This document shows, one piece after another, positions 1 through 63,180 of a stretch of 64,000 nt of DNA. The stretch's first letter is position 1. Each line of letters opens with the position of its first letter. The position numbers and the translations under genes are program-made. The notes under the pieces were generated by a model. It was not told the origin of the DNA and ran no database searches. It saw only the letters and a list, made by a program, of their open reading frames with translations. This DNA comes from Podarcis pityusensis (lineage: Eukaryota): NCBI GenBank assembly GCA_964106645.2, contig OZ067038.1; one strand, 5' to 3'.

Positions 1-35
1 CAGTAGGCTCTTTGCTTTGTTATCCTGTGACATGC

Positions 36-220
36 CTTCATAGTGTTCAGCACACAGCGATAAACTGAGATGAGCTGGCCTTGGGCATTTCTGAACAGAA
101 CCCGCTGGGAGCGTCGACATGGAGAGGGGCTCCGATGACTGCCTTCACTGTTGGGTGGTTCAGATTCATTGTCCAAGTCAGAGTCACTGGAATCCGACCC
201 AGAGATGCTGGAGACATCAC
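36..220 (-). CDS. ANKZF1: ANKZF1 coding exon 4
   Basis: ccacag|GT GAT; GDVSSISGSDS...RVLFRNAQGQLISVYRCVLNTMK; 3' end assumes a GC donor (AAG|gcatgt). Confidence 0.82.
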
Positions 221-9205: not shown

Positions 9206-10773
9206 AGCAGAACAACCCTGAGTAATTGCCCCCTTTGCCTACTTTTTCTGACCCTCTCTAGCAAGTTGCTGTGTGGCAGGAACCTTAATGATTAAATAAC
9301 TGAAAATGCTAGGTTGCAATGATGATGAGACTAAAAGACAGTGAAGATGAAAAGGTCACTGAATGCAAACCTCAAAAACTTAGTTCCTTTTCTTGATCCC
9401 TTGAGACAGAAGGAGAGTCAACCTGAGAGAGAATCTCTCTTGATTACACTCCCTCATGTACACACACACCTCCCAGAAGGGTAGATTCTCCCACTGATAA
9501 TTGCCTTTCACTCCACCTAGATGTCACTAAAATCCTCCTCATTATATCACTGGACCCCTTCCTTGTACGTACCAGACTAGAGATCTCCAGACCTTACTTT
9601 AGGGTAGTCTGAGCATCAGTCTGTGTCTTTCAGTCACCCCTCCAACAACTGTCCATGCAACTCCATGTCACTCTCAAGGTACACCTTTAACGCAGTGCTG
9701 GGTGCCAGATCAAGAAGCCTGATAAGGGTTCTGTCACCCAGTAGCATGAAGTTTGGTTCCCCAAAGAGCTGAAGTCACTAGGGCATAGAATTCCTGGCCC
9801 TAGTTATGGTCTTGGTCCTGGTCTTTACCTCAGCTGAGCCTCAGTAGATCACCTTTGGCAAATTCTCTCTATCTTCCCGGGGTCTCATAGCTCCACCACT
9901 TAATTTTACACCTTGTAGCATAGGAACTCTTGCTTTTCTCTAGACTAGAAGTTTGAATGTGTTAGAATATTGGCTATAAAATGCACCTTTGAGTTTGCAT
10001 ATATGTTGTGCTTTACTATGAATCTGTTTTGAAAATATGCATGTGACTGGATGCACACACGGGTTCTCAGATACACAAGAGCATGTGATGGTGACACCGT
10101 GGGGACAGAATACTAGGCTAGATAAAGTTTTTTTATTTCTCTTTTTTCATTATATTGCATTTTTTACTTCTGGTATAGAAAGAAAGCTAGAACAGTAGGC
10201 TAAAATGAAAGTGAAGCTGAAGTTCTTCTAAACCCCAACTAGATAGGTTTCCTTTAGTTGAAACGTTGTACTTTCCTTTGTGTGGGGGAAGAGATTGATA
10301 TACTTGCAACGGTATGTATCAAGTCCCTGCTCTGCCTGTTCATGAAATTAAATGTATAATAATAATAATAATAATAACAATAACAGCAACAACAACAACT
10401 TTGTTGCAGACAACAGTTTGTAAATATGATGTAAAGCAAAGTCTCAAAACCCAGAATAGGTTTGGACAGGATGTTTCATGATCAGGCAGTGTTTCCTGCA
10501 ATGCTCTCACCAGCAATAATTATTTCCTACTTCTTAATTTGTGCTGTTTTGTCTCCTGCTGCTTTCCTCTCTCCACTCTTTTCCTTCCTTGCCCTCTGTT
10601 ATTTGGTCCCCAGAAGCTTCCAGTTCCTTTTAAGGGTAAAACTAAAATGAAATGAGTCTCCCAACCCAACTGATGCCTTCTAGTTATGTCTTAAATGCTA
10701 CTTTTTTTTTTACCCTCTCTTTTCCCCCCTCAGAGCCTGTGTGACGTTGGATGAGGCCCAGCTCAGTGACAAC

Positions 10774-10876
10774 ATGGCTCACTTTGATACAGAGTATCAG
10801 CGGCTGGAGGCCTCCTACAATGATTCTCCCCCAGGAGAAGAGGACCTGATGGTTCATGTTGCCGAGGGCAGCAAAT
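10774..10876 (+). CDS. ATG9A: ATG9A coding exon 1
   Basis: MAHFDTEYQRLEASYNDSPPGEEDLMVHVAEGSK; exon starts 10734; donor gtgagt. Confidence 0.95.
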
Positions 10877-13800
10877 GTGAGTACAGCTGTGAGCGGCCAG
10901 CCTTGGGGCCAGGCACCCCACAAATCAGTGCTGATGGTGCCTGGGACTGGTGAAAGACTAATCTGAACAGGAAGTGGAATTGTGGGATTCTGGCTCTGTT
11001 TCTGGGGAAACTGCATTTGCTGTGCAGCATGTTTTCAAGCATGCCTGTTCCTGGGAAGCAGCAGTAGTAGGAGAAGGCAGTTGCATTATTGTATTGCTTG
11101 TGGATTTCCCAGAGGCATGTGACTGGCCACTGTGGGACTAGACGGGCCTTTGGTCTTATGTTCTTACTAAGTTCCCACGAAATTGAGCAAGGCTTTCTCT
11201 CTAGAAAGTGTGTTTAGGGTTCAGCTTTAAACTTTTGTTCTTAAAATATTGGGCTTGGATGGTGCAATGGGATGCTGTGTCACAGCTCCTTCTCCCTCTG
11301 GCTTCTTTCTGGTGTGTTGAATTTTAGGATTCTTTTTTCACTTTGTCTGTCTTGCAGCTCCCTGGCACCACATTGAGAATCTGGACCTCTTTTTCTCTCG
11401 TATATCCTTACCTGAAGGGCAGGGATAGTTGTATCCCAGCTGTCGGGATTGGGGGTGGGGGCTCGGTTGCAGCAGAGCTGGGAACCCTTTACAAGGTTCC
11501 TTGTGGCCCATTAAACACTCCAAGAGGCAAAGGACCTTTCAGTATCAGTTCAGGAACAAAGGATAGCATAATAAAGAACCAGCCTCTGGAACCCATACAG
11601 GTTTACAGGCCAGACAGCAACAAAAACAATACAAGGAGATTTGCAATCACCCCCTCAAATGAAATTCTTTACGGCAGAAAGTTTCTGACCCTTTCCTCCC
11701 GATGGTGGCTAATCGTGACTTAATAGCATGGCAGGTTGAACTGGAAAAGGAGATGCTTCCTGCTAATGGGAGACTAGTCTCTGGTGAAACTAAGGGTACT
11801 GCAACCAATATTCTGAGCAATTCTCTTTGACTGTACCCCTCACGTCTATAACCTGCACCAGAAGAATGGCTTCACCTGTATGCTCATCAGTGAGATCTTT
11901 GAATTAATGTGAGTATGAACTCCATGTCTCTTCCCGTAAAACAGGATTGGAAGTGGACATTCATTGTATTTCCATGGGCACCTTGTCAGAGATGAAAAAA
12001 AGAGTTCTGGTTTCCTGCTGGAGCTAGTGATCCTTCCCTGGCCCCAATTCCCTGTCATTCAGGTTGATAGGAAAACAAATCCTACTCCTGATTCTCTTTA
12101 TGCAAGATGTCTCTGGTATGAAGGATTTAGACAGCTGGCACCTTTTGCTGGCCCAGATAATTTGAAGATGGGAGCGGGGAAGGGAAGGCTGAGTGCCTCC
12201 TAGTGTGACACATCTCCTCTTCTCACAGGCAGTTCATCTTTGTTGTGGCCTTCACCACATTCCTTGTCAGCTGTGTTGACTACGATATCCTGTTTGCTAA
12301 CAAGCTGGTGAATCACAGCCAGCATTCCAGTGACCCTGTCAAGGTGACCCTGCCAGATGCCTTCCTGCCTCCCAATGAGTGCAGTGCCAGGTAAAGTTAG
12401 CAATGGCTATCCTTTCCTAAAATTGACCACATCCTAGCCCATCTTGGTCGGGTCTAAAATCCAAGAGGCCTCCTGGATGCCTACTTTGCATTTTAAGTCA
12501 CACTCAATCGTAGCTGTAGGCTCGGAAATGTAGTTCTTGCAAGGTGAGCGTTGCTGTCAAAACTGCTTTCAGATGTTTACTTCTATATCTGCCAAATCTG
12601 GGGTCTCCAGTGTTAACCTAATGTCATTGATAAAGTCGGGCCCCAGACGAGCCAGACTTTTAATATACTAGACAATCTTTGGCCTCTTGTGGATTAACTG
12701 TGAGAGAAAGCTTTGAGTTCACATTTGTAGCTGTACCCATCTTCTCTCAGATTTTCCAGCCCAGTTGCCCATTAGTACAGTTTAATGCATCTCAGCACTG
12801 CATAGCCTTGCACCCACCTGAAGTGCCTGAATTCTAGCAATCTGAGAAGGAGGGGTTGGCACATGCTTTGGAAAGAACTGTAACGACCAGAAGGGAGGTG
12901 GCTGCTTCTTCCTTTCGGTGAATCCATCTTTCTCATAGGATCCAGGCCAATGGCTTTCTCATCTCTATCCTGGTGATTGCGGGGGTCTTCTGGATCCATC
13001 GGCTGATTAAATTCATCTACAACATTTGCTGCTATTGGGAAATCCACTCTTTTTACATCAACGCTCTCAAGATTCCCATGGTAAGCTGCTGTGCTCTGGG
13101 AACTGTTAGATATGCATGCACAAATCTACACACTGTGCTATTGATAGGGAATGTTGACACCTTAGCAATATAGTTCTGATTACCTGATTACAAGCAAATC
13201 AGTACTGCCATATCCTGCCCCCACTTTTTGTTTGCAACCTTCCCAGGAGCATTTGACTGACTGTTACTGGAGACAGAATGCTGGAGCAACATGACTTTTG
13301 GTTTGACCCAGAATAACATTTGGGTTGATCCTGCAATTCAGTTCTTAGTGTCTCATGTTCTTTTCGAACCAGTGAGAAGCCTGCAGATAATACCTATTGC
13401 TTCTTCTCCTTTAAGGGAAAAATCTTTCACTCCTGAATCTTCCTCTGTCCCTTATTGACCTTCCTCCAGAGTTGTACACTGCTGCTGATCTTTCTGGTCT
13501 GCTGCTAATCCCATGGTTGCTCAATCTGACTTGCTTGGTTGAGTGGCAGGGCTAGTATGTTCTGCAGCTGTCATTGTCTGGTTTGCCAGTGTTTGTTATT
13601 TGGTCCTTGCCCAAGAGTGTTAGAAGTTGAGTCTCTGCATAACCAATTCCCTTCCCCTTTTTCAGGAGTGGGGAAAGTTTTTGTTTGTTAAATTTGTTAG
13701 TCACTTTATCTTTCCCAAGACAACTCAAAGCAACAAACAAACAACCAAATGGACAAAAAGCCCCATCCCTAGATACATCAAAACCATTGTGGGGTGGGGG

Positions 13801-16800
13801 GAGAAATACATTAAAAACCTACCCACTTCTAAAAGGCCACAGATAGTCAAAGGCCTGGATATGAAGGAAAGTTTTTGCCTGGCACATAAAGATATATAAT
13901 GATGGTGCCAGGTGAACCACTCTGTGGAGAGCATTCCACAAATGGGGAGCCACCAAAGAAAAGGCTCATCTTCATGTTGCTACCCTCTGGACCGCTTGTG
14001 GAGGGGGGACATGAAGAAGCACTTTAGATGATGACTGCAGGGTCCAGGTTAGTTCATATGGGAAGAGATGGTCCTTGAGGTGTTGCGGTTCTGAGATGTT
14101 TGAGGCTTTATATGTCAAAATTGGGCCCAGAAACTAATTGGCAACCAGTACAGTCAGGCCAAGGTTGGTGTTACATGCTCAAACTGTCCTGCCTTGTTGA
14201 GCAACCTGGCCACTGAATCCCGCAACAGCTGAAGTTTCCGAAATGTCTCAGAGACAGTCCCATGTGCATTGCAGTAATCTAACCTAGAGGTTGCCAGAGC
14301 ATAGACAAGAGAAGTTAGGCTATCCCTGTCCAGTTGGGGTCACAGCTGGGCCACCAGCCAAAGCTGATGGAAACCACTCCATGCCACTGAGGCCACCTGA
14401 GCCTCAAGTGACACCAATGGATCCTGAATTATCCCCAAGTTGTGTACCTGCTCCTTCAGAAGGGAGTGTATCCCCAGCAAGAGGATTAGCCTTGTCACAG
14501 CACTAACCTCACCATCCCTCTCTTTGCCTGCAGTCCAATTTGCCCTACTACACATGGCAGGAGGTGCAGGCACGGATTGTCCAAATCCAGAAGGAACACC
14601 AGATCTGCATCCATAAGAAGGAGCTGACAGAACTGGACATCTACCACCGCATCCTGCGTTTCAAGAACTACATGGTGGCCATGGTGAACAAGTCGCTATT
14701 GCCTATGCGCTTCCACCTTCCCCTACTGGGCGATACAATCTTCTATACGCGTGGCCTCAAGTACAACTTTGAGCTCATCTTCTTCTGGGGCCCTGGCTCA
14801 CTCTTTGAGAATGAGTGGAGTCTCAAGGCCGAGTACAAGCGAGGCAGCAACCGCCTGGAGCTGGCTGAAAAGCTGGGCACCCGCATCCTCTGGATTGGCA
14901 TTGCTAATTTTCTGCTCTGTCCGCTCATCCTCATCTGGCAGATCCTCTACGCCTTCTTCAGCTACACAGAGATTCTGAAGCGAGAGCCAGGAAGCTTGGG
15001 GGCTCGTTGCTGGTCCCTCTACGGCCGCTGCTACCTGCGGCACTTCAATGAGCTGGACCACGAGTTGCACTCACGCCTCAGCAAGGGCTACAAGCCAGCC
15101 TCCAAGTACATGAACTGCTTCATTTCACCTCTGTTCACTGTCGTGGCTAAGAATGTGGCCTTCTTTGCTGGCTCCATCCTCGCTGTCCTCATTGCCCTCA
15201 CAATTTATGATGAAGACGTGCTTGCTGTGGAGCATGTCCTCACCACAGTCACCATCCTGGGTGTGGCTGTCACTGTCTGCAGGTGAGTTGAGATTGGCTG
15301 CGAACAGAAGGGTTTTTGTTTTTGTTCTCTGAGTCTTGGCATCAACGGGGTGGTTGCCATTATTATGAGGAGCACCCAATCAGAGAATTGACAGGTGGAA
15401 ATTAAAAGCATTCTGCTGACCAAAAATTGCATTAAGCTACAAAAGTTTTTCTGCTGGGTCTCCCACTGAGGAAGTTACTGGGAGATGAATTGCCTGTGCT
15501 GCCTTTTCCTTCTGTGGCAATGATAGCTAGGACACTTGAGGAAATTGATTAAGCTTAACAACCCACGTCTTTCAGCTCTGCAAAACTGGTTGCTTCCCTG
15601 GTTTAGTGATCTCAGTGATGGTGGTGCCTTGGAGTTGTTTAAACTGTGACATCTGCAATGAGAGGGCCCCTGGGATGGTTCGAGGCAAAGCCTGGTTTTT
15701 CTAGAATAGTGCAACCTTAGACTTACCTTTCAGTTTTTGCCTGGATCAAGCAAGGACAGAGCTTCTATCTGTCCATGAAGAATGTGACAGGCACTGCTTA
15801 AAGGTAATACTCTGGGGTGAGTCACAAACTAGGGTAAGCGGACAGAAAAGGAGAAAAAGGAGTTGGAAACATCAGCTCAGCTTGATATCTGAGAGATGAA
15901 ACAACGGTGTGGGTGGTATAGCAGGTATAGCTGCTGATTAAACAGAGTTAGCTGTGCTGTATATTGATGTGCAGTAAAAATCAACCTGATGCTTCCCTAT
16001 GTTGTAATTGATAGTTGATCAGCTTCTGACATTTTAAATTGATGTAACCTGCCACTGACTTAATGTTGAATAGGAGTCTAAGAAATCCAGAATCTAGGGA
16101 TTTGGCTGATCACTGAGTCTGTGAGGAATTGTTGCAAGGTTGCTTTAGAGGCAAACAGGCATCACACATTTTATTACCCTTTTATCAAAGGCAGTCTGAA
16201 CAAGTCTGTACTTCAAAAAAGGATATAAATAAGTACATAAATGTGTGAAATTATCATCTTCCTCCACAGTGAACCAGTTTGTTAAAGCTGAACCTGCTAT
16301 ATCTGACCCATAAATAGTTTATCTCACTACACTCCTCTGTGTTCATCTTTCCATGAAGAGGGAACATGGGGCTGGGGACCCCTAGAACATAAGGTGTCTG
16401 TCTGCTTGCTTTTATGAAGGAATGTAGCTCTCCTTGACACCTGCCCCATCTGTCTTGCAGATCCTTCATCCCGGACCAGCACCTGGTCTTCTGCCCAGAG
16501 CAGTTGCTTCGGGTGATTCTGGCGCACATCCACTACATGCCTGACCACTGGCAGGGCAACGCCCACCGCTATGAAACCCGAGATGAGTTCTCCCAGCTCT
16601 TCCAGTACAAGGCGGTGAGGTGGGGCAGGGTAGGGTGGGAGGAAATCATATAAGAACTGCCCTTTGCATAAACCCTGACTAGATCCAAGCATGTATTGTC
16701 CGTAGAGTTCCCCCCAAAATGGGGGAGGTTCTCTGACCCCAGGGCATGTGGGAGGAAAGAATCACTGGTATTTCCCCCAGTTATTCTCCCCAGTGCCTGC

Positions 16801-19800
16801 AGTCATGTCTTGAGGCTGTGCTGTGGTTTCACAAGTGATAGACACCCGTGCAGTTGTTGAACTTAATGCCTTTGTCTCCTTTACTTAAGGTGTTCATCCT
16901 GGAAGAGCTGCTCAGCCCCATTGTGACTCCCTTGATCCTCATCTTCTGTCTGAGGCCCAAAGCTCTAGAGATAATTGATTTCTTCCGCAACTTCACTGTG
17001 GAGGTGGTGGGCGTGGGAGATACCTGCTCCTTTGCCCAGATGGATGTGCGGTGGCATGGACACCCTGCGGTAAGTCCCAGTGAGGGGCAGCATCATGGAC
17101 CTGACATGCCTTGCCTTGTCCTGGGTCACAGACACCCTGCAGTGCCCCTGTCCTGCCCCAGTAGGCAGCTGTGACGCTGCTCGCAGGTCAGGTCTGCAGT
17201 GCCCTTGTGTCTGCTGGCTGCTCCTAGTCCCATTGAGGCAGCTGCATGGTGTGCACAAAACACCCTGTCCCTCTCTTGTTTTGCAGTGGATGTCAGCGGG
17301 GAAGACGGAGGCTTCCGTTTACCAACAAGCCGAGGATGGCAAGACGGAGTTGTCCCTCATGCACTTTGCTATCACCAACCCACACTGGCAACCTCCTCGG
17401 GAGAGCACGGCTTTCATCGGCTTGCTTAAGGAACGTGTGCACCGCGACAGCAGCCTGGCTCTGGCCCAGCAGGCTGTCCTGCCTGACAACGCCCTCTTCA
17501 CCTCCATTCAGTCCTTGCAGTCAGAATCAGAGGTACTGGGAACTAGTGTGTGGTAGAACAGGACATAATCCTGGTTTATCATAGGGAGAGATTTGGAGTG
17601 AACTGTTTCTTTTTGGTGGGATGGGGATAATGTTTCTATGTGGGCTTCTGGGCTCCGTGGAGTCATTTGAGTGCCATGGTAGTATGGCTGCCACTTTCTC
17701 ATTGTGACCTAATTAGACTACCTTCCTCTTGCAAGCATGCTACTTCTGTCTCCTGTTATCTCTTCAGCAAAAGTTAGTCATACTCCCCTAAAAGTTGGAA
17801 CCTTCAGAGTCTCCACGTTACCCATCCTCTCTCCCCACTCCTTTATTTCCCAATTCCTTTTCCTAGGATATATTATTGCTTTTCTTTCTGTATATTTTTA
17901 TTGTGAAAGTCTTACGCTTACGGAAGACTCAAAGGTTGCAAAATGGAATTGTGATGAATCAGTGAGATTCCTGTTGATATGAATTGATATTGGAATCAAT
18001 ATTATTCAATAAGATGCACAAATAACACTCAAATGTAAATAAAGTCAGACATAAATAAGCACCATCCCTCCCATCCACCCCCAGAAGGTCCTTGGTGTCT
18101 TGTGGTTACATTGTTTCAATTTCACTTATCCAACTGCAATAAAAAACCTAAGGTCCTTTTGTGTTTAGGATCTCTTAATGTGACTAACAATCCCCTTCTC
18201 ACTGAATCACTTGTCTTTCCTATAAGAAAGTCCCCCAACACCTGTAGCATCTTCTCTTCCAAGTGTCACCATTTAGAAAGCATTTGAATTGCTGGGGGCT
18301 GGAGATGGGTGGGCTAATTTTCCAAAATGTGGAGAGAATTCAGGATCCACACTGCAAAGGCAGAGGTGAAGTTATTTATTTTTATTACAGTATATAATTT
18401 CTAGACCGCCCTTCACCCAAGAATCACAGGGTGGTTTGCAAAGTTCAGTTGTGGTGGTGAAGTGTCAAATGTAGATAGATGGGGCAGACCTTGGATCTTC
18501 CTGCCTGGGTCACACCTCCCTCCTCTGTTCTCTCCCTGCAGCCACACAGCCTGATTGCCAATGTGATTGCAGGCTCCTCAGTCCTGGGCTACCAGGCAGT
18601 CCGTGATGGGCAGGCCTCGCGGCATCTCTCGGCTGTGTCTGAGGTGGCATCTGCCCTGCGTTCTTTCTCTCCTCTTCAGTCAACGCAGGCGGCCCACAGG
18701 AGTTCCCACACAGAAGGTTCTCAACATCGGGGTCCTGGCACAATGGCAGGCTCAGGGTAAGAAGCAGCATGTTGTAAGGGGCTAGAGGAAAAAGCCAAGA
18801 ATTGAGCACCTCACCAGCACTTTACCCAGAGTGCTCTGAGGACTATTTCATGAGGCTTTTCCCAGCACAGCTATACATTACTGTGTGTTAGAGCAGGAGG
18901 CAGCCTCCTAGATGTGCCTTTGAAGCAGCAGCAAGAGCTTTTTATGCCTTTTATTACCTCTCTCCTATTGGACTCCCAGTTCCCATCAGTGCCAGCTAGC
19001 ATGGCCAGTGGCAAAGACTGGTCACAAGCTCCCCACCCATGGCTTGGGGTTTTCTTGTGTTTGGAGCTGAGGTTATGAGGGACAGCAGAAAGCTATCCAG
19101 TTCTGCAAGGCTCCCCAAAATATTGCTGTGTGTTCTAAACATTCACTTTTAGTTAGCAGGCTACAGTGGTGGTATGGTTGATGTCACCCTTTCTAGGCTC
19201 AGAGGGGGGAAAGCTGCTGCAATCATACTATTGGGGTGTGGAGTAGCAAGAAGGTGCCTTCTGGACTCCAAATCACTCTTTCTAACACATCTTGACTTGA
19301 CTCTTCTCTCCCTTCTGGCTTGCAGGGTTGATGCCAGGACAGCTAGTTCTGGCAGTAGTGCCTGGGAGGGCCAGCTTCAGAGCCTGATCCTTTCAGAATA
19401 TGCCTCTACTGAGATGAGTCTGCATGCACTCTACATGCATGAGGTGAGCTGAGCATCAAGAATCATGCAGGCCTTTGCAATGGGCCCTGAAGGTTCTGAG
19501 TAGACCTGCATCTTGAGACATGTGTACCTGAATGAGTACAGCAAAGGAGGATCGAATAAGCCTCTGTACTGTGATATAGCTCCTAACCTAAGAGAAAGGC
19601 CCTTCATTATACAGAAATCAGGCTGGTAGCAAATGCCCCCTTCACTGGGCCATGATTTATGGCAATTTGTGCATAACTGAACATGAGTGGAGAGTATATA
19701 GGCTTGCAGGATGTGAGTGACACTTGCATGGATGCAGGTGACGACTTGCATAGACCTGTGTAGAAGCATGTGAAATTTAGGCTGTAAATGTGATATTTAT

Positions 19801-22237
19801 GTGGAGGCCTGTGATACTTGGATTGTATCAGGTCCCAAACTGGGCTTACTTGGGACACATGTCAATGTTACCATAGGGTTCTAGCTGGCTGCCCATTAAT
19901 ACCCCCTGCCATTCTCAGTTACACAAGCAGCATGCCCAGTTGGAGCCTGAGCGGCACTTGTGGCACCGGCGAGAGAGTGATGAGAGTGGTGAAAGCGCCC
20001 AGGAGGAGCCCGATGCTCATCAGGGCACCCCAAGCAGTGCCATTCCCCGTTCAGCCAGCTATCCTTTCGCCTCACCTCGCCAGGCTGGTGATGAGACAGC
20101 TGCTCTGCAAGCCGGCTTCCAGCGTCGATATGGAGGTGTCTCAGGTATGTTTCAGGAACGCCAAACTCAAAGTGTTTCCATATTCCTTAGCCAGAAAAGG
20201 CTTTATTTCCTGCCAAACCCTGCACATACACATGCTGGCATTTCTTGTTAACTACAGGGCAACGAGAGAAAAAGATTAGATATCAGTCTGACATGCTGCT
20301 TGGCAGTTTTGGTGAACCCTTTTGATGACATGGCCAGTGCATCATATGTAAGAGGCAAGCTTTTACCTGTGCTGCCTACACTCTCAGATTGCCTCAAGGC
20401 CAACCTCAGTGCCTTCACTCCTTGCTGATCAGCAGGTTTGGAGCACTGGCTAGCAGTGCTACAAGAGTGGCATTATGAGTTTGGGAAGTTCAAAAATCCA
20501 TTTTGCTTTCATTGCTGCCATTTCAGAAGGCACCATTTTCTCTGTGATTTGGGCTCTCATTTTCTTTAGTTTCGATTTCCAGAAGGCTCAATTTTCTTTG
20601 GTTATGATTTTCCAGAAGGGTAACCATGTCAGTCCATGAAAGCATGTGCTACCTTAAAGACTAATTTATGACATATTCATACCTCATCAGATGGAGTAGA
20701 CTATGGTTCATAATAAATTTATTAGTCTTTAATGTGCCACAAGACTCTTTGTTGTTCTGGTCACAAAGCTATCAATATATTTATTTCTTTCAGCAAGGGG
20801 CATAGCCAAAGCTGGCAGGGTAGGGTGTTGCTTAATGGACTTGTTTAGAGGAGCAGGTGCGAACAAAAAGACCAAGAGTACTTGCAAGATATTATATTTC
20901 CACTTACGCCACTGCTTCCCAGCTACTGTATCTGTGTTGGGTGGCTGGTAATGGGGAACAGAGCAGACTGGAAGCACCAAACAGATTTTGTAGCAAAATT
21001 TAACTTTGGCTACCCCATCCGGTGGTTATCTTTTCCTCTTTGTTTTCCCACAGACCCTGGCCTGGTGCACAGAGCCCCATCACACTTCGCTCGGCTGCCA
21101 CTTGGGGGGTGGGCTGAAGATGGCCAGACTGCTCGGCACCCAGAGCCTGTGCCAGAGGAGAGCTTGGAAGATGAGTTGCCACCTCAGATACACAAGGTAC
21201 AGCCTGGTTGATACTTGGGCATTGGCAATGGCTGTGTCATGAAACCAGAGGAATCTGCAGTCTCTTAATGCAGCTATATGTATTACTGCACTATCATCAC
21301 CAGGAGCTACCTGGCCAAAGACTAGTTAGTACAAAAATAATTTGATTTTGTGTTTGGGAAGGCTCTACTGATACGAACTAGTCGGGCTTTCAGGAACTCA
21401 TACACAAAGCAGACCAAATAAATCAGGCAAGGCTATCCTGTAAACTGCCCCGTGTTCCTTGGTTGAAGGGAGAAATTTTAATTTATAAATTAAAGAAAGA
21501 AAGCCATGTTTGGGTACACTCCCCCCCCAAAAAAGTGTCATCTCAGGGTAATATTTAATGCTGTATTGTTTTTAACACTCGATTGGAAGCTGCCCAGGGT
21601 GGCTGGGGAAACTCAGCCAGATGGGCGGGGTATAAATAATAAATTAATATCATTATTAAGAGGGAAGAGAGTAATATGAGAAGCTGAGTAAGCCAGGCTT
21701 CCTCAACCTTGGCCCTCCGGATGTTTTTGGCCTACAACTCCCATGATCCCTAGCTAGCAGGACCAGTGGTCAGGGATGATGGGAATTGTAGTTTCAAAAC
21801 ATCTGGAGGGCCGAGGTTGAGGAAGCCTGGAGTAAGCTATGGAGGGACAGAGAGCAATGGCAGGCATTCTGTGAAAGATCTCTAGCTTCAGTGTGCTAGG
21901 CACACACAAAAGTAGGCTGGGGGCATTTTCTGCCTTGGAAAGGGGAATTTCAGTATATGCAGCATTTCTTCCCCTCCATCAGCTGTAGCTGTCAAAATGT
22001 TCTCTTCCATATGGGTTTTAGAGGTGGAGGATCCTTATTCTCCTTTGCATGTAGTCAGCTGATATTGCTAAATAGCCTACAACTTGCTTAAAAATAAATA
22101 CTGAAGGTTTCAGGAGGTGGGATCTTTGTTTGGCACAAAATCTGGAGTATTCAGAGCTTTGCTTTGACCCAGTCTTTCTCCTCACTGTCCCCCTTCCCAA
22201 ATAACTTCCTTTGCCCTCCCAATTCCTTCAGGTGTAG
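10774..22237 (+). CDS. ATG9A: Autophagy-related protein 9A (lipid scramblase); 14 coding exons, 2553 nt, 850 aa
   Basis: MAHFDTEYQRLEASY...PPQIHKV* is near-identical to vertebrate ATG9A; all exons phase-consistent. Confidence 0.98.
11358..11401 (+). CDS. ATG9A: ATG9A coding exon 2
   Basis: SPWHHIENLDLFFSR, followed by U12 donor ATATCCTT. Confidence 0.93.
11402..11843 (+). other. U12-type (minor spliceosome) AT-AC intron in ATG9A
   Basis: 5' ATATCCTT, branch-like TCTTTGAC 11824-11831, 3' CAC; joining restores FFSR|VYNLHQK. Confidence 0.92.
11844..11908 (+). CDS. ATG9A: ATG9A coding exon 3
   Basis: VYNLHQKNGFTCMLISEIFELM. Confidence 0.93.
12229..12390 (+). CDS. ATG9A: ATG9A coding exon 4
   Basis: QFIFVVAFTTFLVSCVDYDILFANK...ECSAR. 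Confidence 0.95.
12939..13080 (+). CDS. ATG9A: ATG9A coding exon 5
   Basis: IQANGFLISILVIAGVFWIHRL...KIPM. Confidence 0.95.
13740..14490 (-). mobile_element. L2 LINE 3' fragment
   Basis: GCATTCCAC...GCCACC...AAAGGC and CAGTAATCTAACCTAGAGGTT stretches typical of an antisense L2 ORF2 end. Confidence 0.6.
14534..15282 (+). CDS. ATG9A: ATG9A coding exon 6
   Basis: SNLPYYTWQEVQARIV...VAVTVCR. Confidence 0.97.
16461..16614 (+). CDS. ATG9A: ATG9A coding exon 7
   Basis: SFIPDQHLVFCPEQLL...LFQYKA. Confidence 0.95.
16890..17069 (+). CDS. ATG9A: ATG9A coding exon 8
   Basis: VFILEELLSPIVTPL...HGHPA. Confidence 0.95.
17287..17532 (+). CDS. ATG9A: ATG9A coding exon 9
   Basis: WMSAGKTEASVYQQAEDGKTELSL...LQSESE. 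Confidence 0.95.
18542..18756 (+). CDS. ATG9A: ATG9A coding exon 10
   Basis: PHSLIANVIAGSS...EVASALRSFSPLQ...MAGSG. Confidence 0.93.
19326..19443 (+). CDS. ATG9A: ATG9A coding exon 11
   Basis: VDARTASSGSSAWEGQLQSL...LYMHE. Confidence 0.95.
19919..20144 (+). CDS. ATG9A: ATG9A coding exon 12
   Basis: LHKQHAQLEPERHLWHRRESDESGES...RSASYP...RRYGGVS. Confidence 0.94.
20619..20765. mobile_element. Degraded Penelope-like palindromic element
   Basis: CCTTAAAGACTAAT ... ATTAGTCTTTAATGTGCCACAAGACTC, related to the 2287 element. Confidence 0.5.
21054..21196 (+). CDS. ATG9A: ATG9A coding exon 13
   Basis: DPGLVHRAPSHFARLPLGGWAEDG...PPQIHK. Confidence 0.94.
21694..21829. mobile_element. hAT-type MITE
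   Basis: TIRs CAGGCTTCCTCAACCT / AGGTTGAGGAAGCCTG; perfect TSD GAGTAAGC; degraded relatives near 24480, 33840, 55850. Confidence 0.85.
22232..22237 (+). CDS. ATG9A: ATG9A terminal exon coding part (Val-stop)
   Basis: Polypyrimidine tract, then ccttcag|GTG TAG; completes the HKV C-terminus. Confidence 0.85.
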   Translation: M

Positions 22238-29962: not shown

Positions 29963-55167
<25,205 letters not shown>

Positions 55168-56872: not shown

Positions 56873-56906
<34 letters not shown>

Positions 56907-57107
56907 TGTGTGTGTGTGTACCTGGCTTCTTTTAGCTCTGGCTGCCGGAAGCGGCTTTTGAGGGTCCTGTGTGGCAGTTTGCACAGCAACAATCCTGTCC
57001 GTTAGCTATCGCTAACGCCACCCATGTCCTCCGAAGCCAAGAAGAACCTCATGGGGGTGGGGGAAGGGTCAGTTGAGGAAAGTCCCAAGGTAGCACCCCG
57101 CTGAGGC

Positions 57108-57305
57108 TCAGTCGTCGTCCTGTTGCAGCTGCTGGTGCCTGCTCTGGTACCACAACATGGTGGGAAGGTTCTGGCAGCCTTGGTAGCGGCGCTGGCGCTC
57201 CTCTTCCCCCAGGGGTGGCACAGAGTGGCAGGGCGCCCCTGCTAATGAGACGTTGAGCAGCTGGGCTGGGGTACCTGAGCCAAAGACTGCAGACCATGGA
57301 CCCAC
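57108..57305 (-). CDS. C13-like gene last coding exon
   Basis: ggcag|GTG...TGA; NVSLAGAPC...YQGCQNLPTMLWY...DDD*. Confidence 0.82.
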   Translation of the reverse strand: MGPWSAVFGSGTPAQLLNVSLAGAPCHSVPPLGEEERQRRYQGCQNLPTMLWYQSRHQQLQQDDD

Positions 57306-59515
57306 CTGCCAGGAACGAGAGAGATTGCTTCACTTAAGGTTGCCCTGGGCCACGACTCAATCCATCGTCAGCATCAATGCTTATATAGCACTTCCAACGC
57401 ATCAGTGTTTCAGGTACATTATCTCAGTATCTTATACAATTGGCCTGTAAGGATGGCCAGTAAAGCAAACTGAATTAAGCCTGCCTGGCTGGCTTCCACA
57501 AGCTCTAAAAAATTGTAAGTTTCAGTGACTTCCTTTAGTTTGTTGCATCCATGAATGTACCTTGAATATACACACCTTTTTTCCTTTTAATGGCAATGGT
57601 CTGTTTTTGAGCAGTAAAACTAATTGGGATGTAACAAAACACATGGTTTTCTTTCCAAAGGTGCCATATTGCACATCAAAAGACTCCTTTAGTGCAAGCT
57701 ACCTTCCACAAACTTCAGATGTCATTCTCTAATTGTCATCACAGATGGCCTGTGTGTCAGTCACATGAGCAAAGGTTGGCTCTGGCCATTTGCCAAGTTC
57801 TAGTTTCCAGCATTGCTGCCTCTACACCTAAGCATTTATTTCTCAGTCTGCCATGCTGCCCAGCTGATTCCCAACTCTTTCCCTACACACAGAGGAGAAA
57901 CCAAACTGGTTGCAAGATGGTGCATAAGATGACTTGGCCTTACCAGGAGCTGTGATCTGCCCTGAACTTGCTGCACAGCTCAGGCCAGTTTTCATCTATG
58001 TTAATTGGCTAAGCACCAATGTCCCTACTCCCCGCTCCCCTCCCCTGGAACTGGGAGTAGAAACCCAGGGAGTGTTGCCACCCAGTTAGTGATTCTGCCA
58101 CTAGAAGTAGCCACTTTGAACTGGAGAGACACCTGTTGCTAATGCCACCTGCCAAAAAGCAATTTGAGGACAGGGGCTTCCTAGTCACTATTTTGAGCCT
58201 CCTGGTATTTATGTCCAGAACAAACAAATGCATCCTTGCCATCTCTTGAGGGACCATAAATTGGTGGCAGAGCATATGCATGCAGAAGGTACGAGGTTCG
58301 AAACCCAGTGTCCCCAGTTAAAAGGACCTGACAGCAGGCAACATGAAACCTGAGAGCCACTGCCAGAGTAGACAACATTGGACAATTAGCCTGACTCCTT
58401 ATGTTCCTATGCTCTGCAAACACCACACCTTGGACTCCGAACAATCACTGCCCACCTTCCTTCCATGGCACTTACCGGCAACAAATGCTGGAGGAGGCAC
58501 TGGTCAGGCTGCAGTCCGGCCCAGAACTCGGCAAAAGCCGACCCACCGCTGGCGGTAGTGGTGGCAGTGGCGGTGGTGGTGCTACGTATGAGCACCACGT
58601 TGGGATGGCGCCGTGATGCCCGCAGCTTTTTTGTCAGTGGCCCCGGATAGCTCTGGTCAAGGAAGAGGAGAACCCGGCGAGCGTTGCAGCTCTCCAAGTC
58701 TGCTAGCAGCTCCGAGATGGGGTACCGCTCCTTAGGATCTGCCTGTTGCAGGGAAGGGACAGCTCATCAGCACCTGCCCCTTGGTCACAGACACACACGC
58801 ACACCCCTCCCCGCTCCACAGTCAGGAGATCAAGGGGATTCCACTGCCTGGGAGTTAAAAGGAGCGGATTAAATGGGAAAGAGCAAGACAGGGCGAGCAC
58901 CCACTGCAAAGGCCAGTGTTGTTTTCTCCCTGCAGGCACACATGAAAGAGCTGGACGGCCCTTTGAAGGGAACAGAGGAGAGGAGAGGGCTGCAGCCTCC
59001 ACCTGCAGTTCTGTCAGCATCTCTCCTTCCTCCAGTCGGGCTTCCCAGGACATGCTGGGACAGGTGGGATGACCTCCTCCTCCTCCACCACCCCACTGCC
59101 AAAAGTGGCTCACTTCACTTTCCATTTCCAGCCTAGGAAACCCCAAAGGAAACCTGGCAAATGGCCAAATGCAGGCCTTTGAGAAGGGCTGGTGCCGCTT
59201 TGTATGTGTGCACCAGCATCTTAGGCAGCCGCTCTGCATTTTCCTGCCCCAGATGGGTTTACTTGGCACCCCAACTTCACTGCTCCCTGCAAGCAATTGA
59301 TATTGGCTTACCCCCATGTGATAAATGCATGAGTGAAAGTCTCCTTTATATCGTTAGCGTCCCCATTCCCTGCTTGGCTAGGCAGGTGACATTAGCATCA
59401 ATAGCCAAGGTCCTTTTTTGGATGTATCATGATGAAGTAGGAGTCATTCATTTAACAAGATGCATATACCACTTGACTGTTGTAAAACCTCCAAGCAGTT
59501 TTACTTGTAAGTTAA

Positions 59516-59552
<37 letters not shown>

Positions 59553-62500
59553 GCTTCATTCTGCACCAACCTGTAGCTTTTCCCAACAAGCAACATTCAT
59601 CAGCGCTTGGCTGAACACTGGGCAGGAGGCCTGTGGCTGTGGCTATTGTCACAGATTCAAAATTCTAACTTTAAAAGTGAGGAGCAATGAAGAACACCAT
59701 GACAGGTTTCCTATTGGATTTCTATGGGTCAGCGTACGGCTGTCTCAATTCACCTGGAGACAATTCTTGGGCAGAGCCACAGACTCCTTGACAAAATAAT
59801 ATATTTAATAGCATTGCTCATGGGGACTAATTTAGACCATTTCCTCGATGTATTTCTCCCTCTGATCTCTCTCTTCCTCTGCCTAACTTACCTGGTGGGT
59901 TACTCCCCCCAATAAATTGGCAAGAGATATGCCCCAAGAGATGATATCCCTGCTGTGAAATAAGCAGCACCACTTTGTAACTTGTGCGGTACTGTATTTC
60001 TTGTGCCCCCACACGTTAATTCGCATATAGAGGTTGTGCACCAGAGGAGGGCTGGGAGGGAGAGAGGGAAGAGGCACATACCCTTCTCTCCTCCTACAGT
60101 GATGTTATACCTATATCCATCATGCCACCCCATCCATCCTTAAGCTCTGGAGGGTTTTGTCTGCACATGCAAAATTCCACTAGAAGAGGGTTGATATCAA
60201 TAGTGGGGACAGAGGATGGGATAGAACCTTCCTCCTATCATAGCTAAGGCCAAAGGGCTAAAAAAAACTGGACCATTCCCATCATACCTGAACAATGATG
60301 ATAGATCAGCTTGGCTTGGCAATTTTTAAAAATATCCTCAAAAAAAAGAAAACAGCAGCAGGTTCATTTTGTCTCCTATACCCTTTTGAAACGTGGCTTT
60401 TTTGGGGGAGGTGTTATTAGGTTATTGTACTTATTTTGATTTTATATATTGTGATCTTTTCTGTGAACCGCCCTGAGACCTCTGGGTATAGGGTGGTATA
60501 TAAATTCACTCAATCAATCAATACAGAAATGGCTTGTGATGTTTCATAACGGGAGTAGAGAGACGAGTGCCTGGGACAGCCAATGTTGGTGGCTCCATGG
60601 GCAAGCGCTGCCCTGCTCCTCCTAGACAGCCTCTCCCTGGCTTCCAGCCCTGACCCCCCCCCCCACTTACAATGCCATTACGGTTGGCATCCCACAGCAG
60701 CATGGTGCCATCGCTGGCTGCTGGGCTGTTGAGGTAGAGCACCAGCGAGTCGGCGCAGTGTAGGCTCCTGCAGACCAGGGCCAGGTGGGAGCGAATGGCC
60801 AGCTTCTCGGTGGCTGGGTGCACGTCGCCCATCTCCACAGTCACTGTCCGGAAAAGAAGAGGGAGAGAGGGATCTGCTAATCCCATGTCCCACAAGCCTG
60901 TCTCCTCCCTCCAACCCACTCCAGTCTTGTACACCAAAGCAGCAGTCCCCCCTCCCACAGATCACCCAAAAACCATTGGTCTTGGCACACCACTTAATGT
61001 TTTTTTCTCCCTGTTGTACCAATTAGAATATACCATGCTAGATGCTGCCTGATTTTTCAAGTTGTATTCCGAGTCCTCCTTATACGTGTTTTATTGCGTT
61101 CTGTCGATTCAAATTGTAATGTAATAAAACGCAAGGAAAGAAAAATGAAGAAGCATGAAAATACAATTGAGTATTTAATGCGAACCACCTGAAAGCAGCT
61201 TGACCACAGTTTGGGAACACCTTCCCCGTGGCATCCTCATTCCTCCTACCGCCACTTGCTCCCTGCCACCACATCCTGCTCATCTGGGAAGGGGCCAGAG
61301 TTGGGAGCAGCATGGGAATATTTGCTAGGCTCCCTCATTAGCCCACTCTGCAAAATGCCCCACAAGTGGTTTGGTCCATGCCGTGCAGGCCTGTAATTTT
61401 TGCAGGGACGTGTAACCCAAAGGCGAGATTTCCCCAGGGCTAGATTACTTATGCATTCACACCCAGCATTTTCTCAAGTGGGATGGACAAGTAGGGTGAC
61501 ACTCTGAAATGCAATACACCCCCCCCCCAATGCAGAACCTTGGTAGCAGGGAGAAGGAAGTGCCAGGAACAGAGTCTTGCCTCTGAAGAGCAGCTCATGG
61601 CGTCCCGACACCCCTGAGTAGGGCTGGGGGGATATATTGATATATCATTTAAAACCAGTTTCTGGCCCCATTGTGATAACTGTTTCAAAATAAATGACCC
61701 GGCAATATATCATGAATTACATGTGTACGTGAGTGTACGTATCATGCAAAAATCACAATATTGGAAAAACCAGGAAACCACCCAGTGCTCCTGTGTCTCC
61801 CTGAGTTGAATGAGCAGATGCTCTTCCCTCCCTTTTCTCTCTCTCTCTCTGTGTCTGTGCCTGTGCCTGTGCCTGGAAGCAGCCAGCAGAAAGCACAGTT
61901 TTGTGAAGCTAGCTGATGCTGAAATTTAAGGAAGTCCCTCCAGCTCGAGTGAGCAGGAGCGGCATTGGGACTTGCTCAGCTGTAGGGCCGGGCAAAGTAT
62001 CTCGACTTATCTCCTCCTTCCTCCTTATTTTAGACATCATGAGATATCAGTCTATCACAATATTTAGCTGGTGATATATCACAATGTTGAAAACCAGGTT
62101 ATCGCCCAGCCCTACCTATGGGCACTGAAAAGTCACCCCCCCCAAGGAAACCAAGAGCCCCATCCCACCCTTGCAGCCGACAGCTAGCTCTCTTTCGTGC
62201 TGGTACCTGAGGCCTGCCCCTCGCTCGCGAAGAAGGCCTTAATGTGCTCTTGGCGGAAGCCGTTGCGTCGAAGCATCTGGTAGAAGAGCAGCAGGTTCTG
62301 CGCATGGCGGGGGTAGGTGACCTGCTCCTGCCAGCCACCTGGGGGAGAAGCACGGTAAGCAATCCAGGGGGAAAAACATGGTGGAGGAGAGGCTGAAGCT
62401 GGTTGCAAGGGGCATAGGAGCACTAACACTGCCCCTCAAGGAGAAAAGGGGCCCCTTAAGCTCATGCCCAGTAGAACAAAGCTGTCGCTCAGTAGCAGAG

Positions 62501-63180
62501 CATGTACTTGCACACAGAAAGGGCCGGGTTCAATCCTCGGCATCTCCAGATAAGGTTGGGCATGTCCGCTGTCTGAAGCCTTGGAGAGCCACTGCCAATC
62601 AGAGTGGCCAATACTCAGCTAGGTGGACCAATGGGCTGACGCAGCACAAGGCTGAGCCTCCAATCAGATTCACCCTCATCTATCCGCTGGCCAAATGCAA
62701 TGGCTTGCAGTGGTGTGTGGTCAGTGGACTGGGGGACTAGGCTAGTCCCCTAAATGTCCCCGCTAAATTAGACTATTGAAGTATTAAAGTCTGGAGCTTC
62801 CTTCCCAAAGCCCAGGAAGCTTCTGCCATCTTAGGGAGGGAGGCGCGATGCTCTCTCTCACACAATATCGCCCCCTCCCGCTATCGCCCTCACAAGCTGG
62901 TGCCTCTGGCCCTAACTGTTACCTTAGGAAAAAAATCACCTCACACCGCTGATGGCTTCAGATTCCCAGAACCAGCAGCTCCTCGCAGCCCCCAGGCACC
63001 ACTTCTCACCTGCAATCAGCACAGCATGGTCACATGTCTGGTACATGCGGCAAGACTTGTACAGCGGAAGCTGCTGCCGGTGGCATCGCCGCGTGTTCTT
63101 GTTGAGTTCGCAGTAAGCGGCTGTGGAGCTAGAGCTCGCAAGGGGCAGGGGCTCCGGGCAGGGGCTGTATCCACGGAGAT
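57108..63180 (-). CDS. Uncharacterised Cys-rich protein with a legumain/GPI8 (peptidase C13, caspase-fold)-like domain lacking the catalytic dyad; last 5 exons, 5' end beyond the window
   Basis: Exons 63010-63180, 62207-62338, 60671-60843, 58476-58742, 57108-57305; all GT-AG, phases 1,1,1,0,0; open frame of ~313 codons to TGA; motifs AVLIAGG..YPRH..FYQMLRRNGF, LVLYLNSP, LLFLDQSYPG. Confidence 0.88.
58476..58742 (-). CDS. C13-like gene exon
   Basis: caacag|GCA...CCG|gtaagt; ADPKERYPISELLADLESCNARRVLLFLDQSYPG. Confidence 0.85.
59517..59549. repeat. (CTG)11 trinucleotide repeat, intronic
   Basis: Direct observation. Confidence 0.95.
60671..60843 (-). CDS. C13-like gene exon
   Basis: gacag|TG...ATT|gtaagt; HPATEKLAIRSHL...DSLVLYLNSPAASDGTMLLWDANRNGI. 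Confidence 0.85.
61619..62114. mobile_element. Non-autonomous DNA transposon (hAT-like)
   Basis: TIRs TAGGGCTGGGGGGATA / TATCGCCCAGCCCTA; TSD poorly preserved. Confidence 0.6.
62207..62338 (-). CDS. C13-like gene exon
   Basis: ccccag|GT...TCA G|gtacca; GWQEQVTYPRHAQNLLLFYQMLRRNGFRQEHIKAFF. Confidence 0.85.
62480..62655 (+). mobile_element. tRNA-derived SINE; related copies ~52180-52310 and ~58255-58410
   Basis: GCTCAGTAGCAGAGCA...GGTTCAATCC head followed by GGAGAGCCACTGCCA body. Confidence 0.7.
63010..63180 (-). CDS. C13-like gene exon (Cys-rich segment plus first core strand)
   Basis: ttcccag|AT...GCA G|gtgaga; LRGYSPCPEP...CELNKNTRRC...SCRMYQTCDHAVLIA. Confidence 0.85.

What the first reader, a model, noticed from the sequence alone, without database searches (positions are those of the whole stretch)
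57108..63180. Uncharacterised legumain/GPI8-like (C13, caspase-fold) pseudo-protease gene converging on ABCB6
Seen: five clean GT-AG exons splice into an uninterrupted ~313-codon C-terminal frame with a downstream AATAAA. The ORF track shows only fragments of it. Known: legumain has WVVIVAGSNGWYNYRHQAD..AYQIIHRNGIPDEQI, catalytic His in VFIYFTDHG and catalytic Cys in VFYIEACESG; GPI8/PIGK is similar. The same blocks occur here in the same order: HAVLIAGGWQEQVTYPRHAQNLLLFYQMLRRNGFRQEHI, LVLYLNSPA and LLFLDQSYPG. The His position is Pro (60722-60724) and the Cys position is Ser (58650-58652), while the substrate-pocket RH is kept. Inference: an intact but catalytically dead third vertebrate C13-fold family, flanked by Cys-rich (likely disulfide-bonded, extracellular or luminal) segments, possibly a peptide-binding scaffold or decoy. 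In human the gene converging on ABCB6 is ZFAND2B, which this is not, so the gene may have been lost in mammals.
Basis: partly seen in the sequence, partly recalled or inferred. Interest (0 to 1): 0.9.

Follow-up and report, generated by a model that had tools for sequence, protein, structure and literature searches.

The report
Lizard beer-belly gene: dead C13 protease
This lizard gene is the counterpart of 'beer belly', a secreted developmental regulator recently described in spiders, and its protein turns out to be a protease-shaped protein without working catalytic residues, closest in sequence to a bacterial protease group, which gives a testable idea of how it works.

Summary
The five exons are real, in phase, spliced in related lizards and under strong purifying selection (dN/dS 0.06-0.20). 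The gene is the lacertid ortholog of zebrafish si:ch211-67e16.11 and of spider beer belly (bebe; bioRxiv, Oct 2026), shown by an exact match of published bebe primers. That preprint reports a secreted regulator acting opposite to Wnt8, lost in mammals, birds and amphibians. It found no domain and dismissed bacterial peptidase hits.

New here: an AlphaFold model of a near-identical ortholog has the clan CD (legumain/GPI8/metacaspase) fold. The catalytic His is Pro in 116/116 orthologs. The Cys position is mostly Ser, and Asn in spider Bebe itself. The closest relatives found are not legumain or GPI8 but secreted prokaryotic C13 proteins with intact catalytic pairs, which probably share the N-terminal domain. 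Trees do not settle gene transfer versus an old paralog. The 'RH' pocket is only half kept. An EF-hand-like loop is conserved (another note on this same stretch saw it; no other DNA in the scan).

Best reading: a secreted pseudoprotease that binds rather than cuts, probably a Wnt-feedback modulator. The binding step is inferred.

The parts
63010..63180 (-). Coding exon 3 of 7: Cys-rich linker and first strand of the C13-like domain (CDHAVLIA, 63011-63034)
62207..62338 (-). Coding exon 4: GGW motif, helix 1 with the legumain Arg44/His45-equivalent positions (62304-62309), LRRNGF
60671..60843 (-). Coding exon 5: strand ending LNSP and first 7 residues of the EF-hand-like loop (60671-60691)
60722..60724 (-). 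Pro at the catalytic His position (Pro in 116/116 orthologs)
58476..58742 (-). Coding exon 6: end of EF-hand-like loop (58728-58742), DQSY motif, Thr-rich insert (58554-58580)
58650..58652 (-). Ser at the catalytic Cys position (Ser 110, Asn 4, Cys 1, gap 1 of 116)
57108..57305 (-). Last coding exon: N-glycosylation sequon (57246-57254, kept in 66/66 vertebrates), GAPC and GCQNLP motifs, stop codon
56541..56546 (-). Candidate AATAAA polyadenylation signal
   Evidence: its use was not tested

Best explanation
The gene is the lizard ortholog of beer belly (bebe / si:ch211-67e16.11). It encodes a secreted, disulfide-rich protein of about 544 aa: signal peptide, N-terminal alpha/beta domain, polybasic loop, and a C13 (clan CD) protease-fold domain. 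SHOWN: gene structure, splicing, purifying selection, orthology, fold (predicted model), loss of the His/Cys pair, and relationship to prokaryotic C13 proteins. FROM THE PREPRINT (spider, sea anemone): loss widens the Wnt8 domain and the segments, and beta-catenin signalling raises its expression. INFERRED: it cannot cut peptides and works by binding. The remodelled substrate groove and/or the N-terminal domain, braced by a Ca2+-binding DxNxNG...E loop next to the dead site, bind an extracellular partner in the Wnt system (a Wnt ligand, glypican or receptor) and damp signalling in a feedback loop. Odds: identity as bebe 0.97, clan CD fold 0.95, catalytically dead 0.85, direct binder in Wnt feedback about 0.45. 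Its role in lizards is untested.
For: Published g30822/bebe primers match exactly inside exons of the Parasteatoda gene whose protein matches all five window exons. Model pLDDT 83, pTM 0.85. Foldseek top hits are PIGK (E 6.6e-7), caspase-7, Yca1 and legumain. VIA Z 17.1 metacaspase, 16.6 legumain, 16.0 PIGK over about 200 residues. hhalign to the prokaryotic C13 profile: prob 98.6, E 6.8e-16, with TDHG over NSPA and EQCYSG over DQSYPG. Spider Bebe, the ortholog with a phenotype, has Asn at the nucleophile position. 93/107 full-length orthologs have a hydrophobic N-terminal core and none has an internal transmembrane stretch; the loop pattern is met in 113/116. 17 Cys are at least 93% conserved. 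dN/dS 0.064-0.196. Function data.
Against: No binding partner is shown anywhere. The preprint's Wnt link is genetic, and zebrafish expression (placodes, pharyngeal arches, tegmentum) is not axial. Ser421 is invariant in vertebrates, which could reflect a role for its hydroxyl. The legumain S1 Arg is not conserved, so Asn-peptide binding is not supported.
Confidence: 0.7

Rival explanations
1. Pseudoprotease that regulates an active protease or is a partner subunit (as c-FLIP does for caspase-8, or T. brucei MCA4 with MCA3). It would tune processing of an extracellular signal rather than bind Wnt components itself.
For: Clan CD pseudoenzymes often act through active homologs (MCA4). Fourteen stand-alone copies of the bacterial N-domain sit directly upstream of C13 genes, so this module may act on a C13 domain in trans.
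Against: No active member of this subfamily was found in animals. Legumain is lysosomal and monomeric, and PIGK is ER-luminal (own knowledge).
Confidence: 0.17
2. Non-canonical enzyme: the Ser at the Cys position, or conserved His138 (N-domain) or His300, forms a new hydrolase or transferase site, for example modifying Wnt as Notum or Tiki do.
For: S421, Q420 and H300 are invariant in 66 vertebrates; H138 and D129 are kept in animals and bacteria.
Against: Position 421 is Asn in spiders and a tick, including functional spider Bebe, and Cys in one horseshoe-crab paralog. N371 and S372 vary. H300 is present in only 22/50 invertebrates. No general base is available at the His position.
Confidence: 0.08
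3. Secreted ligand or matrix/adhesion factor that acts on cell intercalation (Toll/Loto pathway); the Wnt8 expansion is secondary.
For: Pt-bebe RNAi resembles Pt-LotoA RNAi and does not obviously change cell division.
Against: Strong induction by beta-catenin in Nematostella and co-expression with Wnt8 fit a Wnt feedback factor.
Confidence: 0.15
4. Origin rival: the family is a fast-evolving legumain/GPI8 duplicate or an old eukaryotic paralog rather than a bacterial acquisition.
For: The AU test does not reject animal+legumain as one clade (p 0.82), and that constrained tree scored higher than the free quick tree. The animal stem branch is long, 2.0-2.5 changes per column.
Against: Profile similarity favours the prokaryotic group (score 117 vs 45; HMM medians 34.8 vs 9.2 bits). 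The N-terminal domain is shared with it and has no counterpart in the legumain or PIGK structural alignments, which start at residue ~279. Both free trees attach the family among prokaryotic sequences, with unstarred support. No non-metazoan eukaryote ortholog was found.
Confidence: 0.4

Closest known systems
beer belly (bebe), Parasteatoda g30822; zebrafish si:ch211-67e16.11 (bioRxiv 10.64898/2026.10.24.761492)
   Same: Orthologous: primers match exactly, all five exons match at 32-55% identity, and at least the exon 5/6 boundary is shared. Secreted, with the same pattern of losses.
   Different: The preprint assigns no domain, never mentions caspase or legumain, and calls the bacterial peptidase hits unrelated. 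It has no reptile data.
Prokaryotic C13 subfamily with an N-terminal DDxPxANWxHPCRY domain (Bacteroidota T9SS-secreted, Verrucomicrobiota, Desulfovibrio, some archaea; PF01650)
   Same: Motifs SGG, LxLW and EQCYSG/DQSYSG, plus a probably shared N-terminal domain; Atlas models align over residues 25-511.
   Different: They keep DHG and Cys, often carry T9SS or other C-terminal domains, and lack the animal disulfides and the EF-hand-like insert after LLWD.
Legumain (MEROPS C13, PF01650)
   Same: Clan CD fold (Z about 16.5, 199 residues); helix 1 His45 equivalent kept in vertebrates; weak PF01650 hits in 19/59 members.
   Different: No His/Cys pair, no Asp147 equivalent, Arg44 equivalent variable, no C-terminal activation peptide/LSAM domain; has an extra N-terminal domain.
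GPI8/PIGK transamidase subunit
   Same: Top Foldseek hit (E 6.6e-7); VIA Z 15-16.
   Different: No catalytic pair and no transmembrane helix. GPI8 sequences could not be included in the tree.
Clan CD pseudoproteases (T. brucei MCA4, c-FLIP, Raptor RNC domain)
   Same: Caspase fold with a dead site; MCA4 is an inactive metacaspase released from the cell. c-FLIP and Raptor appear in the fold list.
   Different: Those derive from C14-type enzymes. This one is C13-type, has a signal peptide and is pan-eumetazoan.

Membership tests
bebe / si:ch211-67e16.11 | Homology to spider g30822 across the protein | tested here: met
bebe / si:ch211-67e16.11 | N-terminal signal peptide | tested here: met
   Hydropathy in 93/107 orthologs including P. 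muralis; the window's own exon 1 lies outside the window
bebe / si:ch211-67e16.11 | Conserved synteny with ABCB6 in vertebrates | tested here: met
   Elgaria, Anolis, Astyanax, Carcharodon
bebe / si:ch211-67e16.11 | Role opposite to Wnt8 in development | not testable with these tools
   Spider RNAi only
Clan CD fold | Caspase-hemoglobinase alpha/beta core | tested here: met
   (predicted model of P0056, residues ~279-524)
MEROPS C13 peptidase (active) | Catalytic His after the central strand (DHG) | tested here: not met
   Pro in 116/116
MEROPS C13 peptidase (active) | Catalytic Cys | tested here: not met
   Ser 110, Asn 4, Cys 1
MEROPS C13 peptidase (active) | Pfam PF01650 above gathering score | tested here: inconclusive
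   No hit for the window exons or P0056; weak hits in 19/59 orthologs, best E 3.8e-6; the scores I saw were below 22.8
Legumain | S1 pocket Arg44/His45 | tested here: not met
   RH in 48/116; His alone fixed in vertebrates
Legumain | C-terminal activation peptide and LSAM domain | tested here: not met
   Protein ends about 20 residues after the fold-aligned region
GPI8/PIGK | C-terminal transmembrane helix and catalytic pair | tested here: not met
Prokaryotic ANWxHP-type C13 subfamily | N-terminal DDxPxANWxHP domain | tested here: inconclusive
   hhalign prob 84, E 7.5e-6; with the selecting motif masked E 0.008 in the same register vs 0.12-0.17 for reversed controls; Atlas structural match. 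The bacterial set was picked by this motif, so the unmasked test is partly circular.
Prokaryotic ANWxHP-type C13 subfamily | Nesting inside the group in a phylogeny | tested here: inconclusive
EF-hand-like DxDxDG Ca2+ loop | D-x-[DN]-x-[DN]-G-x5-E pattern | tested here: met
   113/116; Ca2+ binding itself not testable

The most novel reading that the evidence does not exclude
An early animal acquired a secreted bacterial C13 protease (N-terminal module plus catalytic domain) by horizontal transfer. The catalytic pair was lost before bilaterians diverged, and the protein became Bebe, a non-catalytic extracellular feedback modulator of Wnt signalling. It was later lost independently in amphibians, birds, mammals and holometabolous insects.
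Probability: 0.3. Interest if true: 0.88.

Novelty: new variant of a known kind. Interest (0 to 1): 0.72.

Why it matters
Bebe has just been proposed as an ancient animal developmental toolkit gene with no known domain or mechanism. Identifying it as a catalytically dead C13/caspase-fold protein gives it a structure, names the residues to mutate, and points to binding rather than cutting. It also reverses the preprint's dismissal of the bacterial peptidase hits, raising the possibility of a toolkit gene of bacterial origin. It adds a secreted, animal-wide pseudoprotease family beside legumain and GPI8, and shows that squamates and turtles keep it intact under strong selection while other tetrapod groups appear to have lost it.

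Tried and rejected
Pfam and PDB sequence searches with single exons gave nothing significant. The search for related loci with the animal domain alignment found no prokaryotic relative by tblastn. The bacterial set came from a motif recalled from memory and used only as a search lead. The N-terminal domain folded alone (pLDDT 78) had no clear PDB match: Foldseek none at E<=0.001, VIA best Z 4.3 to cystatin-like folds, within background. The TNFRSF18 hit to the HDAV..FGH motif is a short chance match. Trees could not place the family, and GPI8 was missing from them. Literature searches for the zebrafish and LOC names found nothing; the preprint was found through a PANTHER id recalled from memory and then verified by primers. 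Pseudogene or artefact readings are rejected. The 'Mustela' name in cluster P0177 sits in a >=90% tilapia cluster and is taken as a mislabel. Mammalian loss was not checked on DNA, and no human sequence was used.

Full report
1. Observation. The five minus-strand exons (63010-63180, 62207-62338, 60671-60843, 58476-58742, 57108-57305) have AG/GT ends, matching phases and an open frame to a TGA, and the Pro and Ser codons are where stated. Contigs from three public runs of related organisms skip all four introns exactly, and one 2740-nt contig carries the exons plus 524 upstream bases. 24 of 25 listed exon variants are synonymous. Codon-wise dN/dS is 0.091 against Elgaria, 0.064 Anolis, 0.196 Mauremys and 0.187 Astyanax (near saturation), with splice sites in the same places. 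The gene is intact and functional.

2. Identity. An exon 6 search returned 55 relatives. The nearest named protein is Podarcis muralis LOC114602775 (544 aa), so the window is most likely a Podarcis-like lacertid (inference). Fish orthologs are called si:ch211-67e16.11. The family occurs in squamates, turtles, lungfish, sharks, ray-finned fish, amphioxus, echinoderms, hemichordates, molluscs, annelids, nemerteans, chelicerates, crustaceans, a mayfly, clade I nematodes and a tapeworm. No amphibian, crocodilian, bird or mammal protein appeared among the best 120 hits for a lizard or a lungfish query; these are word-limited searches of annotated proteins. The gene converges on ABCB6 in Elgaria, Anolis, Astyanax and a shark, and follows ZFAND2B in Anolis and a turtle.

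3. It is beer belly. A bioRxiv preprint (10.64898/2026.10.24.761492) names spider g30822 'beer belly'. It reports a predicted secreted protein in bilaterians and cnidarians, absent from amphibians, birds, mammals, holometabolous insects and non-metazoan eukaryotes. Knockdown widens the Wnt8 domain and the posterior segments; in Nematostella, beta-catenin activation raises expression 9- to 60-fold; zebrafish expression is in placodes, arches and tegmentum. I tested the link: both published g30822 primers (PMC11083766) match exactly inside exons of the Parasteatoda gene for P0223, and P0223 matches all five window exons. The authors found no domain, do not mention caspase or legumain, and judged bacterial peptidase hits unrelated.

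4. Fold and dead site. AlphaFold2 on P0056 with 116 sequences gave pLDDT 83 and pTM 0.85. Residues ~279-524 match clan CD: Foldseek PIGK E 6.6e-7, then caspase-7, Yca1 and legumain; VIA Z 17.1 metacaspase 4, 16.6 legumain, 16.0 PIGK. The ESM Atlas also points to PF01650, and 19/59 domain sequences hit it weakly. Profile alignment to active prokaryotic C13 proteins fixes the register: DQLFVFTTDHG over DSLVLYLNSPA, and EQCYSG over DQSYSG. The His position is Pro in 116/116. The Cys position is Ser in 110, Asn in four chelicerates including functional spider Bebe, and Cys in one horseshoe-crab paralog that still has Pro. A position that tolerates Ser, Asn and Cys without a base partner is not a nucleophile (inference). 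Of legumain's S1 pair Arg44/His45 (PMC4357240), only the His is fixed, and only in vertebrates; RH occurs in 48/116.

5. Other anatomy. A hydrophobic N-terminus is present in 93/107 orthologs, with no internal membrane span. 17 Cys are at least 93% conserved. A dibasic, often RxxR, motif lies in the flexible loop 176-208 of 111/116, a possible convertase site. The N-terminal domain has no clear PDB match.

6. Nearest relatives. In the Atlas structure search, the best non-family hits are Bacteroidota C13 proteins aligned over model residues 25-511 (328 residues, TM 0.52/0.60), which includes the N-domain. A motif scan fetched 115 prokaryotic loci. Many encode PF01650 proteins with intact DHG and Cys, some with T9SS tails. 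The animal domain profile matches them at prob 98.6 (score 117) versus 83.5 (score 45) for 48 metagenomic legumains; HMM medians are 34.8 versus 9.2 bits. The N-domains align (prob 84); with the selecting motif masked, the same register remains weakly (E 0.008 vs 0.12-0.17 for controls). Fourteen stand-alone N-domain ORFs sit directly upstream of C13 genes. The prokaryotic group is equally close to legumain, so it may simply be slow-evolving. Free trees attach the long animal branch among the prokaryotic sequences with unstarred support, but the AU test does not reject animal+legumain (p 0.82). Homology to these bacterial proteins is shown; transfer is not.

7. Mechanism. Most likely a secreted pseudoprotease that binds and does not cut, acting as a feedback modulator of Wnt signalling (overall 0.7; the direct-binding step about 0.45). 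Rivals are regulation of an active protease as with MCA4 (PMC3220528), a ligand or adhesion role through Toll/Loto, and a non-canonical enzyme. A gatekeeper role for the N-domain loop, as in TbMCA2 and RgpB, is speculation; I could not inspect coordinates.

8. Verdict. The gene family is already named, with a phenotype in one spider. Its structural identity as a dead C13-fold protein related to prokaryotic secreted proteases was not in the literature I could search and contradicts the preprint's reading. Novelty: new variant of a known kind (clan CD pseudoprotease). Interest 0.72.

Noticed in passing
window ~10684-22000 (+), ~29915-55167 (+), ~1-250 (-): ORF fragments read as ATG9A and ABCB6 exons and probably ANKZF1, matching the vertebrate ANKZF1-ATG9A-ABCB6 block (names from own knowledge).
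   Followed up: no
window 61611-62122: Intronic element with inverted arms 61611-61628 / 62105-62122 and very high contig depth at ~62060-62115: probably a non-autonomous DNA transposon. Another high-copy repeat lies at ~60430-60510.
   Followed up: partly
window 59517-59551, 56873-56919, 55049-55150: (CTG)11.7 intronic repeat, (TG)23.5 repeat in the 3' UTR, and a 21-nt GA-rich array in the ABCB6 last coding region.
   Followed up: no
window 58554-58580: Thr-rich insert shared with P. muralis and absent from the other squamates aligned, in a low-confidence loop.
   Followed up: partly
L015, L027, L037, L039, L040, L049, L063, L073, L074, L076, L079, L085, L094, L114: Stand-alone 120-180 aa proteins made only of the ANWxHPCRY domain lie within 30 bp upstream of C13 protease genes: an apparently undescribed domain without a Pfam hit (L086), possibly an inhibitor or partner subunit.
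   Followed up: partly
P0198 (horseshoe crab cluster): One horseshoe-crab paralog has DQCFSG, a Cys at the nucleophile position as in the bacterial motif, but keeps Pro at the His position.
   Followed up: partly
L120, L245, L246: Tara metagenome contigs carry family members with fewer introns; the host is probably coral (inference, unverified), which would fit the cnidarian orthologs in the preprint.
   Followed up: partly
P0006 (Phrynosoma), P0031 and P0008 (turtle-like): One annotation fuses ZFAND2B to this gene. Some turtle models look frameshifted or divergent (P0031), and the lizard-turtle dN/dS is higher (0.20): annotation error or relaxation in some turtles.
   Followed up: no
P0177: A 'Mustela putorius furo' name inside a tilapia cluster, probably a mislabelled record rather than a mammalian ortholog.
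   Followed up: no
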